NCBI RefSeq assembly: GCF_006345805.1
Contig: NC_042999.1
Span: 167,958,001-168,022,000 of the forward strand
Length of the DNA stretch: 64,000 nucleotides
Origin: Octopus sinensis
Taxonomy: Eukaryota
Direction of reading: 5' to 3'
Part shown: piece by piece, positions 18,939 through 50,065 of the stretch
Layout: each line of letters starts with the position of its first letter
How positions within the stretch are numbered: the first letter of the stretch is position 1
Notes under the pieces: generated by a model
Seen by the model: the letters and a program-made list of their open reading frames with translations, nothing else
Told to the model about the DNA's origin: nothing
Database searches by the model: none
Translations under genes and position numbers: made by a program

Positions 18939-19032
18939 AACCATCAGAAAAACAGTGTGAAGACCAACATTATTGTCTAAACAAAGGTGAATGCTGGTAC
19001 CGGTTACCTCCCTTAGATGAGAAATATTGCAA
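18939..19032 (+). CDS. EGF-domain common exon (Cys1-Cys4)
   Basis: Acceptor tttgtattctattcag|, donor tgcaa|gtaagt; 94 nt = 2+90+2. Encodes PSEKQCEDQHYCLNKGECWYRLPPLDEKYC(K). YCLNKGECW resembles the FCVNGGECF / YCLNGGxC motif of EGF-family ligands. An in-frame tandem acceptor is possible at 18948. Confidence 0.88.
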
Positions 19033-19155
19033 GTAAGTATTTCTCCCAAAATAATAAATCCACATATATATATATTACAGTTCTTACAATAATAGTTTTA
19101 GATAGTAAAATTTTACTCTTGTACAAATTAAAGATATCTCTCTTTTAAAAATCAG

Positions 19156-19215
19156 ATATAGATATTACCACTTTTAATATAGCCATAGCTATATTAAAAG
19201 TGGTAATATCTATAT
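19156..19215. repeat. Perfect 28-bp inverted repeat with 4-nt loop
   Basis: atatagatattaccacttttaatatagc-cata-gctatattaaaagtggtaatatctatat. Confidence 0.95.
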
Positions 19216-21176
19216 ATAAACTGTTAAATATCCATAGAGTGCTTTGAGTTTCTTAAAAAAATTTTTATATATTTAAAGCACTGTGAAATGTATATTTAAA
19301 CTATGAAAATATTTTTTCTATAACTATTTTCATTTCAATGTGTGTGAGGGTTTGTTTATGATGAAAGAAATCCATGAGAATATTTTGTTAAACAACAGAT
19401 ATAACTTGTTAACCAAGAAATACCTGTTTTGTCTTGTTCTTAACTAAAATAGAAATTTACCTATTGCACTTACATTTATAATAATTAAATTTAGTCATCA
19501 TCATCATCATTATCATCATCACAATTATCATAATTTAGTTTTACAACTGTTCACAAACATAAACTCTTGTATGATATTTCTTTATACAATGACATTCACA
19601 GGCCCTATGCACATACTCACACACATGCACATACAGTATTTAGCATTATCAGCATCCTATAAACATACTGATATTAAATTTGCTATATATATATATATAT
19701 ATATATAATGATAGCAAATTTTTATAAATATACACTAATCCCTCAACTATCATGGGTGTTACATTCTAAACCCCCTGCGATAGGTAGAAATCCATGAAAT
19801 AGAAACAGTACTGTACTGTATATTTTTCAAATTATTTTTATAATTTGTATATATTTATTTCATTATAAATGCAAAACAACACAGATTGGAATCAACATAA
19901 GCTTAAATAATAAATTGCGGTAGGTGATCCGCAATATGGTAAGGGATAATATAATATAATATAACATAAAATACTTTGTATATCATCATCATTGAACTGT
20001 TCTGACTGCTGATATGTGATACAACACAAGATCTGTCCACTCATAGCAAAGTGTGTGTTTGTATACACACACACACACACAAATATGCAGTAAGTAGAGT
20101 CAGTGAAGAATTTAGCATGAAGGAAGGAGTTCATCAAAGTCATCTATTCTTCATAGCCCTACAGGCCATCACAGAGGAGTTTAAGACTGGATGTCCATAT
20201 GCTCAATGAGTTGTTCTCATAGCTTAGACAAAAGTAGGATTAGAGAGGAAATTCTAGGTATGGAAATTAAACCAAGAATCAAGAAACCCCATGAAAAATT
20301 TAGCAAAGACTAAGATTTTAGTGAGTGAGAAAAAAGACAGGACTTTTGCTATCTTCATGGAAATTGTCTTGCTCAGTATGAAGGAATTGATCAATTATAA
20401 ACTCTGTACACTGTTCCTAGAGAAAGCTATGGATACACAAGCAGTATGAGGTGTAGTAGAATTGCAGGTAGACTAACAGAGAAGGTAAGCATCAATGTGA
20501 TAGATACCTTGGAGCAGTGCACAGTGCATACTATGAACAGTCAGAAATGGATTTTCTTCAATGTCTTGATAGCTCACTGGAATTAGTCAGTAGGTTTTGT
20601 TACCTGGAAAGATGGTTGCTCTGAAAGTTAAGTACCTAAGTTAAGAACAGGTCAGAGAAAATTCAGGATGCTACCACTGCTGCTGGCATCTAATCAGTAT
20701 TTGTACTGATTTTTATACATCATTGCAATTCTAGCAATTACTATTTCAATTATAGCATTTTATGACAATGTACTGCTATGATAAATAAACTTGTTTTCTG
20801 TATTTTTACTTGGCTGTCAATTAAAAACAACAGTCTGTTTCTCTATGTGTTGAAAATGCAGGGAGCCTAGCACCAATGAGCCCTGTACCAATGAGCCTTG
20901 CACTTTATGTCAATATGGGAATCTTCAATAAGAGCACAACATAAATTAACACAAAATTTTGAAAGGTTTTAATGTAGATTCCTTTAAAATCAGAAGTTTG
21001 TATCATAGAACCAGGAGTTGTCTCAGGAAAGGTTGTTATAAGAACGGTTGAGTTTCATTTGAAGTCCTCATGTCATTCTATTACTTTATACCAAGATTGA
21101 TATATGCTAACTCTTTAAAATACTATTTACGTTTATAGTGATCTGCTTTCTCTTTAAACCTCTCTCTCAATATACG

Positions 21177-21207
<31 letters not shown>

Positions 21208-21504
21208 ACACGTACACACACACACACACACACACACATATCCAATATGTTTCATTCCCTAGTGGACAGTTATTATTACAAAGGAGATAATGATTTCTTC
21301 ATAATATTTGATGAAATAAGAAATTTGAAATTAAGGAATTACAGAGAAAAAAATGCATAGAATTCACATATATTTTTTGATATTTGAATTTTTTTTTCTC
21401 ACTTATGAAATTCTTGAAGATTATAGTCAATGGTAATTGTGTATAGAACTATTTCATTCTTTTCAGAAATCTTCAGTATAATAATGATATCAAGTTTTTG
21501 CTAT

Positions 21505-21705
21505 AAGGGCAGCTTGGTGGAGGGGATTAAGTCAATTACATCAACCCCAGTGTGCAACTGGTACTTATTTAATCGACCTTGAAAGGATGAAAGGCAAAGT
21601 CGACCTCAGCGGAATATGAACTCAGAACATAGCACAGACAAAATACCACAAAGCATTTCGCCCAGTGGGCTAAAAATTCTACCTGCTCGGCCCCTTAATT
21701 TTCAG

Positions 21706-21742
<37 letters not shown>

Positions 21743-21760
21743 TAATAATAATAATAATAG
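21505..21760 (-). mobile_element. SINE family C with adjacent (AAT)n
   Basis: Reverse complement of the gagttcaaatt..gtcgactttgcctttcatcctttc..aagtaccagt unit seen at 47430-48145. Confidence 0.75.
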
Positions 21761-47250: not shown

Positions 47251-47429
47251 TTTAGAAGTCTTAAATGAGAAACTTCAAGCCTCTTCTCTTTCTCCTTAGT
47301 GGTCAAATTGTATCCTGTAACATTTGACTGGTTTCTACTGATGTTGTTCTTGTGTACATATCTTGTGAGTACTTTTTCTAATGAAAAGGCAGCATGAAGA
47401 GTTTTCAATTTTCAGTTACTATCATCTTC

Positions 47430-47918
47430 ATCAAGACAAAGTCGTTAGAACACCAGAGAAAATGCTTTGCTGTATTTCTTCTGATTCTTTGCATTCTGAG
47501 TTCAAATTCTGCCATGGTCAGCTTTGCCTTGCATCCTTTCGGGATAAATAGAATAAGTAGGATGAGCACTGGGAGTTAATGCAATCGATTAACCATTCCC
47601 CACCAAATTTCAGGCCTTGTAGAAACTGATTATTATTATTATTATGATGATGATGATGATGATGATGCCAACACTGACGCCGATGACGTCATAGGTTTAA
47701 GGTGTTGAGCTGGCAGACTCGTTAGCACACCAGGCAAAATGCTTAGCAGCATTTCATCTATCTTTACATTCTGAGTTCAAATTTCACTGAGGTCGACTTT
47801 GCTTTTCATTCTTTTCCGGGTCAATAAACCAAGTACCAGTGAAACACTAGGGTCAATGTAGTCAACTAGTCCCCTCCCAACAATTTTCAGGCCTTGTTCC
47901 TATAATAGAAAGGATCAA

Positions 47919-47954
<36 letters not shown>

Positions 47955-48145
47955 ATAGGTTTAAGTTGGTGAGGTGGCAAAAAAATGCTTAGCAGCTTTC
48001 TGTCCATATTTACACTCAAATTCTGCTGAGGTTGACTTTGCCTTTCATCCTTTCAGGGCCAGTTAAATAAGTACCAGCTGAGCAGTGGGGTTGATGTACT
48101 CTTGGAATTGCTGGCCTTGTGCCAAAATTTTCAATCATTATTACA
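47430..48145 (+). mobile_element. Three head-to-tail SINE family C copies
   Basis: Repeated aaatgcttagc..gagttcaaatt..ctttgcctttcatcctttc..aagtaccag..ggccttgt, each followed by an (ATT)n or (GAT)n tail. Other + copies near 12045, 53670, 57755 and 61170. Confidence 0.8.
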
Positions 48146-49485
48146 TTGGTATATTTTTTGGATATTGTTAAATGTGATTCTGCAAAAACAAACAGGAAAA
48201 TGTTTTTGTGGGGCAAAACTTTCTCCTTTCTCCTCAGTGAAAAAAAATAAAAATAAAAATAAAATTTAGGCCAGAAAAACATGCAAGAATTGTTGTTGAT
48301 GCAAAAATGAATGTGGGTTAGGGAAATAGATATTCCAAAACAACAACAACAACAATAACAACTACGATTGATGCTGCATGTTAGAATGGGATTATAGAGT
48401 TCAGTCAGTTACAAGGAAGACAAACTTCAAAATATAGAGACTGTTCTTAATGGTTGGGCAGATAACATCCTTGGAATTGGTGTCATAGTAAACACTGTTG
48501 GTTGAATCTCACACTGTGTTAGTTGGTTGGGTGGGTGGGTGGGTGGTTTGGTTGGTTGGCTGGTTGGTTGGCGCTGGAAAGTGTATTGAAGCGTTCTAAA
48601 GCTCCGACACAGCAGATACGCCTGAAAGATATATAATTAATAGATGTCAATCTTTGTTTTCAGAAGCTATGATATCGGCGACTAAATGCTTTTAGAATGT
48701 TTACTCTCTTGAGAGCAAGAGAAACTTCTTGGAATGTATTTGTTGTTTTTATTATTTAGCAGAAGATCAAGAAGTTATGGTATCTTGTGTTTGATACAGC
48801 AGAACAGCTTTTTTAAAGTTGTTTGCTATCATAGCAATACAGCTGGAGTTAACAACAACAACATCAAACATAGAATAGTAAGAATTAAGTAGATAAGGTA
48901 AGAATATTATTGGGGGTATTGCATCAGAAATTATTAGCAGAAACTAATGAAAAGTTCAAAATACATATAATACTTATTTTTTTATAATCCATTTAACTAT
49001 GTGGGTTAGAATGGAATTTTCTTCTTTTTTTAAAAGACAAATTAGAAATTTACATATTGAATCAAATATTTTGACAGGAGATGCATTTTATTTCTAGTTG
49101 TGATAAACGAGTAAAATTGTCAGGCAGAGTATTCTCCCTTGGCTGGCTGTAACTTGTTTTGAATCTTATTCAAATTAAAAGACAGGAACTCAGTAATGGT
49201 GACTCCAGAGAAATCAAAACGATGGCTATGATGTAAATATTTACTAATCATCAGTCTAGGAAGCGAATAGGGGAATATATTTCATTAATGGAATGAATTC
49301 AAGCTCTGATTTCTAAAGCAGCTGAAACACTTTACAGAAAAAAAAAAATTTCATTATTTCAAAATAATTTCCTTTCCCTGTGAAAAGTGTATTAAACAAT
49401 AACATTGTTTTCTTTTTTTTTTCCTTCATATGAAAAAAATTTTTTAATTCATTTTTTTCAAATTCCCTTTCCATCTACATTTATT

Positions 49486-49535
<50 letters not shown>

Positions 49536-49956
49536 CATGGAATTTTCAGTAATAATAATCAGACTACAAGTAGAATTTTGTTACATCAGTATATCAAAAT
49601 ACTTACTCTTAATACCTTTTCTGCTTGACATATTCTCTAACTAAATAGGATAGGTTGGTTTTGCCATTAGCTGACAAAAAGTATGTAAAAAGCAGAAACC
49701 TCAATGTGATGACACAATTAATCATTATAGCCTCATACTGAAAATTTATCTCATTTATAGAAATACCTAGAAATTTCATCTTTTTTTTTATCTCTTCTTT
49801 CCTGTCATTTTTCATTACATCATTACTTTTGTCTTTATTTTCCACAAGTAGAGCCTTACAATCTTGAGGTAATTTGTTAATAATTTCCTTTTTGAATTAG
49901 TATAGAATGAAATGTATGTTATAAACCATTGTTTAATGCCTTGTTTGACTCTGCAG

Positions 49957-50065
49957 GACAATGCCACTACCTTACAAGTGCTGTCATAGCTATAGGAACT
50001 TTGCTGGCATTTTTTACTTTAATAATGTCCATTGCCTTGATATATTTTCTGTGCAAATGTTTCAA
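49957..50065 (+). CDS. Stalk + transmembrane exon
   Basis: ttgactctgcag|ga caa ... ttc aa|gtaagt; 109 nt = 2+105+2. Encodes (G)QCHYLTSAVIAIGTLLAFFTLIMSIALIYFLCKCF(K). Confidence 0.87.

What the first reader, a model, noticed from the sequence alone, without database searches (positions are those of the whole stretch)
18939..50065. Hidden neuregulin-like ligand gene with mutually exclusive alpha/beta-type EGF C-terminal exons in a cephalopod
Seen: the common exon ends at Cys4-Lys in phase 2. Two different downstream exons (27899-27960 and 39586-39653) each begin with Cys5, contain Arg-Cys6 and end in phase 1, and both join the same TM exon. Including both gives g|gt gcc aca TAG, an immediate stop; skipping both frameshifts the TM exon. 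Reading frame therefore enforces a strict either/or choice. Known: vertebrate NRG1/NRG2 swap the last third of the EGF domain through alternative alpha/beta exons with this phase pattern, which changes ErbB affinity. Inference: a mollusc ligand has the same switch, either ancestrally or by convergence. I am not aware of this being described, but cannot check the literature here.
Basis: partly seen in the sequence, partly recalled or inferred. Interest (0 to 1): 0.9.

Follow-up and report, generated by a model that had tools for sequence, protein, structure and literature searches.

The report
Octopus neuregulin-like gene, doubtful extra exon
The window holds the EGF and membrane-anchor exons of an already annotated octopus neuregulin-like growth-factor gene. 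The proposed second "alpha" exon has no support beyond its pattern, although snail and worm relatives of this gene really do swap that part of the EGF domain.

Summary
The gene is not hidden. The spliced exons 18939-19032 + 39586-39653 + 49957-50065 + 59450-59579/59645 translate to an exact substring of Octopus sinensis LOC115209589 (XP_036357499/500, "pro-neuregulin-2, membrane-bound isoform").

- **Beta exon:** it is real and is used in every annotated isoform of three Octopus species, in Argonauta, and in cuttlefish transcripts.
- **Alpha exon (27899-27960):** it appears in no annotated product. It has a 10-residue C5-C6 loop without the aromatic-x-Gly motif. It scores negative against profiles of genuine alternative exons and shows no similarity beyond the Cys...Arg-Cys frame. 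Swapping it in removes the matches to solved ErbB ligands.
- **Chance:** its pattern is expected 1.1-1.7 times per intron without the Arg and 0.04 times with it, so chance is not fully excluded or proven.
- **Other phyla:** Gastropod orthologues in five genera have isoform pairs that swap exactly this EGF third. The Patella and annelid loci show two tandem exons with the same phases.

I put about 12% on a working octopus switch. No cross-species cephalopod DNA or reads could be obtained.

The parts
18939..19032 (+). Common EGF exon: linker plus Cys1-Cys4 of the ligand EGF domain. It ends in phase 2 (AA|gtaagt), two bases into the Lys codon that follows Cys4.
   Evidence: Direct reading and translation. 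Exact match to O. sinensis XP_036357499/500 residues from 112. Conserved in O. vulgaris, O. bimaculoides, Argonauta and Sepia. The intron position and phase are the same in Patella, Lamellibrachia and Saccoglossus.
27899..27960 (+). Its status as an exon is unsupported; it is probably a look-alike or a decayed pseudo-exon.
   Evidence: The sequence facts are confirmed. It is not in any annotated or retrieved protein. Profile scores are -0.9 and -4.0 bits against type A and type B alternative exons. There is no similarity beyond the C..RC frame (P=0.37) and no nucleotide similarity to the beta exon. It gives no Pfam EGF hit, and 26 of 30 PDB ErbB-ligand matches are lost. Chance expectation is 0.04-1.7 per intron depending on the criteria. 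It does not lie in a repeat.
39586..39653 (+). Genuine EGF C-loop exon ('beta'): (K)CHIDYTGQRCETMLGDTVQGVR(G). It encodes Cys5-Cys6 with the canonical Tyr-x-Gly-x-Arg-Cys motif plus the stalk, running from phase 2 to phase 1.
   Evidence: Used in all annotated isoforms of three Octopus species, with orthologous exons in Argonauta and Sepia. It is the top hit in the window for the type B profile. It is the only + strand match in 64 kb to [FYWH]-x-G-x-[RK]-C. PDB ErbB-ligand alignments run through Cys6.
49957..50065 (+). Transmembrane exon: (G)QCHYLTS, the hydrophobic span AVIAIGTLLAFFTLIMSIALIYFL, then CKCF(K). It runs from phase 1 to phase 2.
   Evidence: It starts with GACAA, as does the Patella TM exon.
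59450..59645 (+). First cytoplasmic exon (K)NGRRKSNLPSEYGSFIQASSKGDTYCHIPSDDFTQPDLYLSSL, with two annotated donors: 59579 (isoform X2) and 59645 (isoform X1, +22 aa VRINLILFASHVVGIKPFLHRG).

Best explanation
The interval is the EGF-to-transmembrane core of the annotated neuregulin-type ligand gene of Octopus sinensis (LOC115209589). The predicted protein is a pro-ligand with an Ig domain (its exons lie upstream of the window), one ligand-type EGF domain, a short stalk, one transmembrane helix and a long cytoplasmic tail.

The EGF domain is split by an ancient phase-2 intron after Cys4-Lys. In octopus its last third is supplied by a single canonical exon, 39586-39653, which joins the TM exon at 49957. 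By inference from the family, the ectodomain is shed in the stalk and the Ig-EGF fragment activates the EGFR/ErbB receptor.

The 62-nt 'alpha' stretch at 27899-27960 is not part of the normal message. It is an exon-like ORF in a 20.5-kb intron that has the Cys...Arg-Cys frame and compatible phases but lacks the rest of an ErbB-ligand C-loop. The alternative splicing actually documented for this gene in cephalopods lies elsewhere: alternative 5' ends, an alternative donor in the first cytoplasmic exon and, in cuttlefish, skipping of the TM exon.
For: - **Identity:** the spliced translation of the four exons is an exact substring of XP_036357499.1/XP_036357500.1. It is 99% identical to O. vulgaris CAI9720502.
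- **Isoforms:** eight cephalopod proteins, including all annotated isoforms, use only the beta-type loop. The EGF-containing cuttlefish proteins assembled from public sequencing runs (Logan), among the 15 of 20 cluster members listed, also use only it.
- **Searches for alpha:** a query carrying the alpha peptide found no protein with it among candidates of 270-860 aa. A 49-156 aa search with the beta form found none either.
- **Alpha is non-canonical:** the beta form has a full-length Pfam EGF hit and alpha has none. Solved ErbB-ligand matches number 30 for beta and 3 weak ones for alpha, and those rest on the N-terminal part only. Profile scores are negative, there is no residual similarity, and the donor is weak (gtacag).
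- **Motif scan:** only the beta exon carries [FYWH]-x-G-x-[RK]-C on the + strand of the whole window.
- **Comparison:** verified second exons in Patella and Lamellibrachia, and a candidate exon in Saccoglossus, all keep the 8-residue loop and Gly-x-Arg-Cys.
- **False positives:** look-alikes of the loose pattern are common, including copies of a repeat encoding CH[AT]VGLNPEPC.
Against: - With Arg required before Cys6, the pattern is expected only 0.04 times per intron. With Pro after Cys5, as in most orthologues, it occurred 0 times in 400 simulations.
- Orthologues in gastropods and an annelid do carry two alternative C-loop exons, so a second exon or its remnant is a reasonable prior expectation in octopus.
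- The alpha stretch has exon-like GC (0.44 against 0.28 in its flanks) and is unique sequence.
- Annotation can miss rare or tissue-restricted exons.
- No reads and no other cephalopod genome could be examined.
- Candidates of 157-269 aa were never searched.
Confidence: 0.55

Rival explanations
1. 27899-27960 and 39586-39653 are mutually exclusive alternative exons, and reading frame plus nonsense-mediated decay enforces the either/or choice. The alpha form yields a ligand with an altered C-loop and hence different receptor affinity, or antagonism. It would be the octopus counterpart of the switch seen in gastropods and vertebrates.
For: - The frame logic is exact.
- C5-Pro and Arg-C6 are present, and the pattern with Arg has a chance expectation of 0.04.
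- The same switch, with the same intron position and phases, exists in orthologous gastropod genes and as two tandem exons in an annelid.
- In human NRG1, joint inclusion of alpha and beta also shifts the frame (PMC11360300).
Against: - No annotated isoform in five cephalopods uses it.
- The loop has 10 residues, not 8, with no aromatic-x-Gly. Gly and the aromatic residue are kept in every verified alternative exon.
- Profile scores are negative and there is no similarity beyond the frame used to pick it.
- The donor is weak.
- It lies upstream of the B-like exon, whereas the second exon lies downstream in Patella and Lamellibrachia.
Confidence: 0.12
2. 27899-27960 is the decayed remnant (pseudo-exon) of a second C-loop exon inherited from the mollusc ancestor. 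Cephalopods stopped using it, and it has drifted: a two-codon insertion and loss of the aromatic and Gly residues.
For: - Two alternative exons are the state in several gastropod orders and in an annelid, so loss in cephalopods is implied if alpha is not functional.
- C5-Pro, Arg-C6, the open frame and the AG/GT borders are retained, at a joint chance probability well below 0.04.
- No other candidate for the missing exon exists in the intron.
Against: - There is no detectable residual similarity to either exon type or to beta.
- Its position relative to the B-like exon is the reverse of Patella and Lamellibrachia.
- A remnant that lost constraint before octopods diverged would not be expected to keep an open frame and both splice dinucleotides.
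Confidence: 0.2
3. The stretch is a cryptic or poison exon. When occasionally included together with beta, it introduces the stop ...PNGAT*, giving an unproductive, decay-targeted transcript or a truncated product.
For: - Double inclusion gives an immediate in-frame stop.
- Human NRG1 has alpha+beta transcripts and a separate poison exon that the authors predict are NMD targets (PMC11360300).
Against: - There is no transcript evidence of any kind.
- Any random AG...GT segment whose length is not a multiple of three would behave the same way, so the model explains nothing specific about the Cys...Arg-Cys pattern.
Confidence: 0.08

Closest known systems
Vertebrate NRG1/NRG2 (pro-neuregulin, membrane-bound) with alternative alpha/beta EGF exons
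   Same: - Ig-EGF-stalk-TM-tail architecture.
- The EGF domain is split between Cys4-x and Cys5. The Cys4-Lys|Cys5 position in NRG1 is from my own knowledge.
- The alternative C-loop exons have lengths that are 2 mod 3, so including both shifts the frame. This is confirmed for human NRG1 in PMC11360300 and shown here for Patella and Lamellibrachia.
- The octopus EGF+TM query retrieves vertebrate NRG4 proteins and NRG1 structures.
   Different: - In octopus only one canonical C-loop exon is detectable.
- No Pfam 'Neuregulin' intracellular domain was found in the octopus, cuttlefish or Patella proteins. NRG2_N is not detected in the octopus or cuttlefish proteins and is just below the cut-off in Patella.
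- The best PDB sequence matches are epiregulin and EGF rather than NRG1.
- Orthology of mollusc A/B exons to vertebrate alpha/beta exons is not shown.
Gastropod 'pro-neuregulin-1/2-like' genes (Patella vulgata LOC, Haliotis spp., Gigantopelta aegis, Littorina saxatilis, Babylonia areolata)
   Same: - They are orthologous over the N-terminal region, Ig, EGF, TM and tail motifs such as LHISEED.
- The phase-2 split after Cys4-x and the phase-1 entry into a TM exon starting GACAA are identical.
   Different: - Gastropods have two verified alternative exons: type A CP..W.G.RCE[LI].D... and type B CP..[FY].G.RC[EQ].... Both are canonical with 8-residue loops.
- Octopus has one canonical exon, which is closest to type B (15.2 against 9.0 bits).
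Drosophila Vein and planarian nrg-type ligands (invertebrate neuregulin-type EGFR ligands)
   Same: They share the Ig + EGF ligand class, which has been proposed to date from the bilaterian ancestor and has been reported in a mollusc (C. gigas) and in annelids (Barberan et al. 2016, PMC4914847).
   Different: - Vein is secreted and lacks a TM segment (my own knowledge).
- That survey does not mention splicing at all (0 occurrences of 'splic').

Membership tests
Neuregulin-type (Ig-EGF-TM) EGFR/ErbB pro-ligand | One ligand-type EGF domain with six Cys and Gly-x-Arg-Cys6 | tested here: met
   With the beta exon the domain reads C-x5-C-x5-C-x11-C-x-C-x8-C with YTGQRC. Alignments to epiregulin, EGF, NRG1 and Spitz structures run through Cys6. 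The Pfam EGF match covers the full model length but is below the cut-off (14.6 against 21.5 bits).
Neuregulin-type (Ig-EGF-TM) EGFR/ErbB pro-ligand | Ig (I-set) domain N-terminal to the EGF domain | tested here: met
   Full-length O. sinensis and O. bimaculoides products have Ig_3, I-set and V-set hits above the cut-offs. The Ig exons lie outside the window.
Neuregulin-type (Ig-EGF-TM) EGFR/ErbB pro-ligand | Single transmembrane segment shortly after the EGF domain | tested here: met
   A 24-residue hydrophobic span AVIAIGTLLAFFTLIMSIALIYFL is followed by CKCFK. No dedicated TM predictor was run.
Neuregulin-type (Ig-EGF-TM) EGFR/ErbB pro-ligand | Neuregulin-specific N-terminal (NRG2_N) or intracellular 'Neuregulin' Pfam domains | tested here: not met
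   Neither was detected in the octopus or cuttlefish products at E<=0.01. NRG2_N scores 26.3 bits (cut-off 27) in Patella, and it is listed among the precomputed hits for Gigantopelta (unmarked) and, marked weak, for Patella and Haliotis. No intracellular Neuregulin domain was found in any of the four proteins scanned. Membership therefore rests on architecture and orthology to genes named pro-neuregulin-like, not on the vertebrate-specific domains.
Neuregulin-type (Ig-EGF-TM) EGFR/ErbB pro-ligand | Binds and activates an EGFR/ErbB receptor | not testable with these tools
   This needs expression of the EGF domain and a receptor phosphorylation assay.
NRG1/NRG2-type mutually exclusive alpha/beta EGF C-loop exons | Phase-2 intron after Cys4-x, and a shared downstream exon entered in phase 1 | tested here: met
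   The same holds in Patella, Lamellibrachia and Saccoglossus.
NRG1/NRG2-type mutually exclusive alpha/beta EGF C-loop exons | Two alternative exons, each with a length of 2 mod 3, so that including both or neither breaks the frame | tested here: met
   The lengths are 62 and 68 nt. Including both gives a stop and skipping both gives a frameshift. This is an arithmetic property and holds whether or not alpha is ever spliced.
NRG1/NRG2-type mutually exclusive alpha/beta EGF C-loop exons | Each alternative exon encodes a functional-looking C5-C6 loop (8 residues, aromatic-x-Gly-x-Arg-Cys) | tested here: not met
   Beta meets this. Alpha does not: CPYQPVDDVSRC has 10 residues with no Gly or aromatic residue in register. 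Its profile scores are -0.9 and -4.0 bits, it has no Pfam EGF hit, and the PDB ligand matches are lost.
NRG1/NRG2-type mutually exclusive alpha/beta EGF C-loop exons | Both forms present in transcripts | tested here: not met
   Only beta-type products occur among the annotated isoforms of O. sinensis, O. vulgaris, O. bimaculoides and Argonauta and among the listed Sepia transcript-derived proteins. No alpha-containing protein was found.
NRG1/NRG2-type mutually exclusive alpha/beta EGF C-loop exons | Each alternative exon conserved across related species | not testable with these tools
   Beta is conserved. The metagenome scans were empty, including the control TM-exon pattern.

The most novel reading that the evidence does not exclude
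The octopus 'alpha' stretch is a genuinely used, cephalopod-specific alternative C-loop exon. It would be the surviving partner of an alpha/beta-type EGF switch that this follow-up shows in gastropods and, as two tandem exons, in an annelid, at the same intron position as in vertebrate NRG1/2. It would produce a ligand with a non-canonical 10-residue loop and hence altered or antagonistic receptor engagement.
Probability: 0.12. Interest if true: 0.7.

Novelty: already known. Interest (0 to 1): 0.35.

Why it matters
What is firmly in the window is an ordinary, annotated gene.

What could matter is the context it opened. The part of the EGF domain that vertebrate neuregulins swap to tune ErbB binding is also swapped in gastropod orthologues, by frame-enforced alternative exons at the same phase-2 intron. 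An annelid carries two tandem exons of this kind at the same intron, and a hemichordate shares the intron. I found no paper in the searchable library that describes this, although the isoforms are in public annotation.

If the arrangement proves homologous, ligand-isoform tuning of EGFR signalling would predate vertebrates. Cephalopods would then be a lineage that reduced the pair to one exon. The octopus 'alpha' exon is the one place where that loss could be tested directly.

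Tried and rejected
- **Short homolog search:** an 89-aa spliced beta query found nothing, because only proteins of 49-156 aa were candidates.
- **Orthologous cephalopod loci:** fetching failed for O. bimaculoides, Argonauta, O. vulgaris and Sepia pharaonis because the gene ranges are 159-292 kb. It also failed for Haliotis and Gigantopelta.
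- **Metagenome scans:** a degenerate alpha pattern and a control TM-exon pattern both returned nothing, so the negative result is uninformative.
- **Structure prediction:** single-sequence AlphaFold2 of the beta EGF domain gave pLDDT 43 and says nothing.
- **Hit at 48600-48692:** it scored 11.7 bits against a three-sequence type B profile and briefly looked like a remnant. It lacks Cys5 and fell to 5.9 bits with a seven-sequence profile, so I rejected it as noise.
- **By-eye alignment of the alpha and beta tails (RC..M..D...G):** it did not survive testing. The nucleotide local alignment scores below the null, and protein similarity is no better than shuffles.
- **Assigning exons to type A or B:** the cephalopod exon is only weakly type B (identities). 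The annelid exons cannot be assigned to A or B by sequence.
- **Alpha as part of a repeat:** rejected. Only a TA microsatellite at 28105-28131 lies nearby.

Full report
**The observation**

- Exon 18939-19032 follows a pyrimidine-rich acceptor. It encodes PSEKQ-C-EDQHY-C-LNKGE-C-WYRLPPLDEKY-C and ends on AA|gtaagt, which is phase 2 inside a Lys codon.
- Both 27899-27960 (62 nt) and 39586-39653 (68 nt) begin with one base that completes Lys and then a Cys codon. Both contain Arg-Cys and both end one base into a codon before GT.
- Exon 49957-50065 starts GA-CAA, so either upstream exon gives Gly-Gln. It encodes a 24-residue hydrophobic span followed by CKCFK.
- Splicing in both candidates gives ...PNGAT followed by a stop. 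Skipping both shifts the frame.

**Gene identity**

A HMMER search of 1.84 billion representative proteins with the spliced beta form found a 493-aa protein that is 99% identical over all 89 residues. This is Octopus vulgaris CAI9720502, named 'pro-neuregulin-2, membrane-bound isoform isoform X2'.

The cluster look-ups add several more proteins:
- O. sinensis XP_036357499/500 (LOC115209589);
- O. bimaculoides LOC106868416 isoforms X1-X3;
- an Argonauta hians protein.

One search also lists a family of Logan-assembled cuttlefish proteins.

The window's four exons, 18939-19032, 39586-39653, 49957-50065 and 59450-59579 (or to 59645), translate to an exact substring of the O. sinensis proteins. 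The O. vulgaris and O. bimaculoides proteins differ slightly. The window is therefore O. sinensis or something identical to it, and the gene is annotated, not hidden.

The full-length products have an Ig domain upstream of the EGF domain. The Ig exons lie outside the window.

**The beta exon**

Its peptide CHIDYTGQRCETMLGDTVQGVRG has the canonical eight-residue Cys5-Cys6 loop with Tyr-x-Gly-x-Arg-Cys.
- It is present in every annotated isoform of the three Octopus species. It has clear orthologues in Argonauta (CPINYNGKRC...) and Sepia (CHMNFSGLRC...).
- With it, the domain aligns through Cys6 to solved structures of epiregulin, EGF, NRG1-beta, heregulin-alpha and Spitz, 30 matches in all.
- It gives a full-length, though sub-threshold, Pfam EGF match.
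- It is the only place on the + strand of the 64-kb window that encodes [FYWH]-x-G-x-[RK]-C.

**The alpha candidate**

Nothing beyond the pattern supports it.
- *Absent from proteins.* No annotated isoform contains it. The isoforms differ instead in their 5' ends and in a 22-residue cytoplasmic insertion made by an alternative donor at 59645. A search with a full-length query carrying the alpha segment found only beta-type proteins, at 80, 76 and 64% identity over the region.
- *Non-canonical loop.* CPYQPVDDVSRC has ten residues, with no Gly before Arg-Cys and no aromatic residue in register.
- *Lost database matches.* Swapping alpha in removes the Pfam EGF match. It leaves three weak NRG1-beta matches in the PDB (best E = 0.32), and these rest on the N-terminal two thirds of the domain.
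- *Profile scores.* Profiles built from verified alternative exons of other species score alpha at -0.9 and -4.0 bits, against 9.0 and 15.2 bits for beta.
- *No residual similarity.* With the Cys and Arg positions held fixed, shuffled versions of alpha match real exons as well as alpha does (P = 0.37). There is no nucleotide similarity between the alpha and beta exons or their flanks.
- *Weak donor.* The donor is ATG|gtacag, against gtaagt or gtatgt at the other exons.

**Chance**

| Pattern required | Occurrence or expectation |
|---|---|
| AG, one base, Cys, 8-10 residues, Cys, open frame, GT in phase 1, 50-95 nt | 4-5 antisense occurrences; 1.07 expected per intron by simulation |
| Same, with 7-11 residue spacing | 1.73 expected per intron |
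| Same, with Arg before Cys6 | 0.04 expected per intron |
| Same, with Arg and with Pro after Cys5 | 0 occurrences in 400 simulations |

Several + strand hits to the loose pattern come from a repeated element encoding CH[AT]VGLNPEPC. Chance alone is therefore not a comfortable explanation. However, these features were chosen after seeing the sequence, so the figures overstate the significance.

**The same gene in other animals**

This is the most interesting outcome of the follow-up. Gastropod orthologues named pro-neuregulin-1/2-like have isoform pairs that differ only in the stretch from Cys5 to the start of the TM exon:

| Species | Type A exon peptide | Type B exon peptide |
|---|---|---|
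| Patella vulgata | CPVEWGGSRCERWDNYKLTRESNR | CPKDFIGPRCEERAPDAVEDFG |
| Haliotis | CPEKWAGRRCELQDIFSLGPDYNR | CPESYKGERCQELESTSVIGTG |

- The same kind of pair is present in P. caerulea, four Haliotis species, Gigantopelta, Littorina and one Babylonia gene. The pairs come from two kinds of annotation: RefSeq and independent GenBank submissions.
- In the Patella locus the common exon ends TGC GA|gtaagt (phase 2). A 65-nt exon at 61362-61426 and a 71-nt exon at 64534-64604 both run from phase 2 to phase 1. The TM exon starts GACAA. Each single inclusion reproduces an annotated isoform, while including both or neither gives a premature stop.
- The tubeworm Lamellibrachia satsuma has two tandem exons of the same kind, 83 and 71 nt, between the common and TM exons. 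Its gene model wrongly strings them together.
- Every one of these verified exons keeps the eight-residue loop and Gly-x-Arg-Cys. That makes the octopus alpha an outlier.
- In both Patella and Lamellibrachia the exon most like the cephalopod one comes first and the other lies downstream. In octopus the candidate lies upstream. The type assignment of the cephalopod exon is weak. No remnant of a second canonical exon was found anywhere in the octopus intron.

**Relation to vertebrates**

The split of the EGF domain between Cys4-Lys and Cys5, with alternative alpha and beta exons, is what I recall for NRG1 and NRG2 from my own knowledge. A 2024 paper confirms that human NRG1 has alternative alpha and beta EGF exons, and that including both shifts the frame of the beta exon (PMC11360300).

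The hemichordate Saccoglossus has the same phase-2 intron after Cys4. The intron position therefore looks ancient. I cannot say from 20-residue peptides whether the exon pairs of gastropods, the annelid and vertebrates share one origin or arose by repeated tandem duplication.

A survey of EGFR ligands across Metazoa reported neuregulin-type ligands in a mollusc and in annelids and does not mention splicing (PMC4914847). Further searches found no paper describing the molluscan switch.

**Mechanism**

*Shown:* the exon structure, the phases, the identity with the annotated protein, and the canonical ligand-type EGF domain when beta is used.

*Inferred from the family:* the protein is a membrane-anchored pro-ligand. 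Its Ig-EGF ectodomain is released by cleavage in the short stalk encoded by the end of the beta exon and the start of the TM exon, and it activates the octopus EGFR.

For the alpha stretch my estimates are:
- 55% that it is a non-functional look-alike;
- 20% that it is a decayed remnant of the ancestral second exon;
- 8% that it is an occasional poison exon.

**Limits**

I could not examine reads or any other cephalopod genome at this intron. Protein candidates of 157-269 aa were not searched for the alpha peptide. The verdict on alpha is therefore a weighing of indirect evidence, and one read-mapping experiment would settle it.

Noticed in passing
L001 (Patella vulgata OW026349.2) 59351-59456, 61362-61426, 64534-64604, 67308-67410; proteins P0052/P0017 and the other gastropod pairs: Gastropod neuregulin-like genes have a frame-enforced pair of alternative exons for the Cys5-Cys6 third of the EGF domain (types A and B). 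The pair is conserved across Patella, Haliotis, Gigantopelta, Littorina and Babylonia. It is visible in annotation, but I found no description of it in the searchable literature.
   Followed up: yes
L002 (Lamellibrachia satsuma JAHXPS010001823.1) 5517-5599 and 7123-7193; also 6024-6088: The annelid gene has two tandem C-loop exons with the same phases, and its gene model (KAI0235633) wrongly concatenates them. A further ORF at 6024 (CFMYNGGVFRCSVHEWGTKFL) resembles the end of the common exon (..ELGTKFC) and may be a pseudo-duplicate.
   Followed up: partly
L005 (Saccoglossus kowalevskii GL016874.1) 48810-48953: This is an unannotated 144-nt, phase-2-to-phase-2 exon-like stretch with a strong acceptor and a gtaagt donor. 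It encodes a canonical C5-C6 loop (CKRNYNGHRC) followed by Cys1'-Cys4' of another EGF domain (..CNYCLNGGTCEFLDEINQIVCK). If included, it would give two tandem ligand-type EGF domains.
   Followed up: partly
L003 1170-1350 and L004 (Sepia contigs assembled from public runs, Logan SRR9970007 and SRR25158142); proteins P0003, P0041, P0044: Recurrent cuttlefish transcripts join the C-loop exon directly to a later cytoplasmic exon, skipping the TM and first cytoplasmic exons. The frameshift ends the protein at ...LRNLQSEAN*, predicting a soluble Ig-EGF form that recalls truncated NRG1 isoforms.
   Followed up: partly
window 59579/59645: An alternative 5' donor in the first cytoplasmic exon adds 22 residues (VRINLILFASHVVGIKPFLHRG). 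This is the difference between annotated isoforms X1 and X2 in O. sinensis, and it is also seen in O. bimaculoides.
   Followed up: yes
window 13713-15874 (-) and 51920-53373 (+): Reverse-transcriptase ORFs (Pfam RVT_1, E = 1.6e-14 and 4.2e-28) from retroelement remnants sit in the flanking introns of the gene.
   Followed up: partly
window + strand 3404, 16361, 34852, 35636, 36876, 39235, 63947; also copies on the - strand: A dispersed repeat, often next to TG/TA microsatellites, carries a short ORF CH[AT]VGLNPEPC preceded by AG and followed by GT. It produces false 'Cys5...Cys6 exon' hits in pattern scans.
   Followed up: no
window 48600-48692 (+) and 9603-9620 (-): Two weak look-alikes of the C-loop were seen. 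TPERYIINRCQSLFSEAMI lacks Cys5 and scores 5.9 bits with the better profile. FPNFTGQRC lies on the opposite strand. I judged both to be chance.
   Followed up: yes
window 39626-39628 compared with P0001: The O. vulgaris protein has Glu where the window, O. sinensis and O. bimaculoides have Gly in the stalk (ETML[G/E]DTV). This is the only difference from O. vulgaris in the 89 residues.
   Followed up: no
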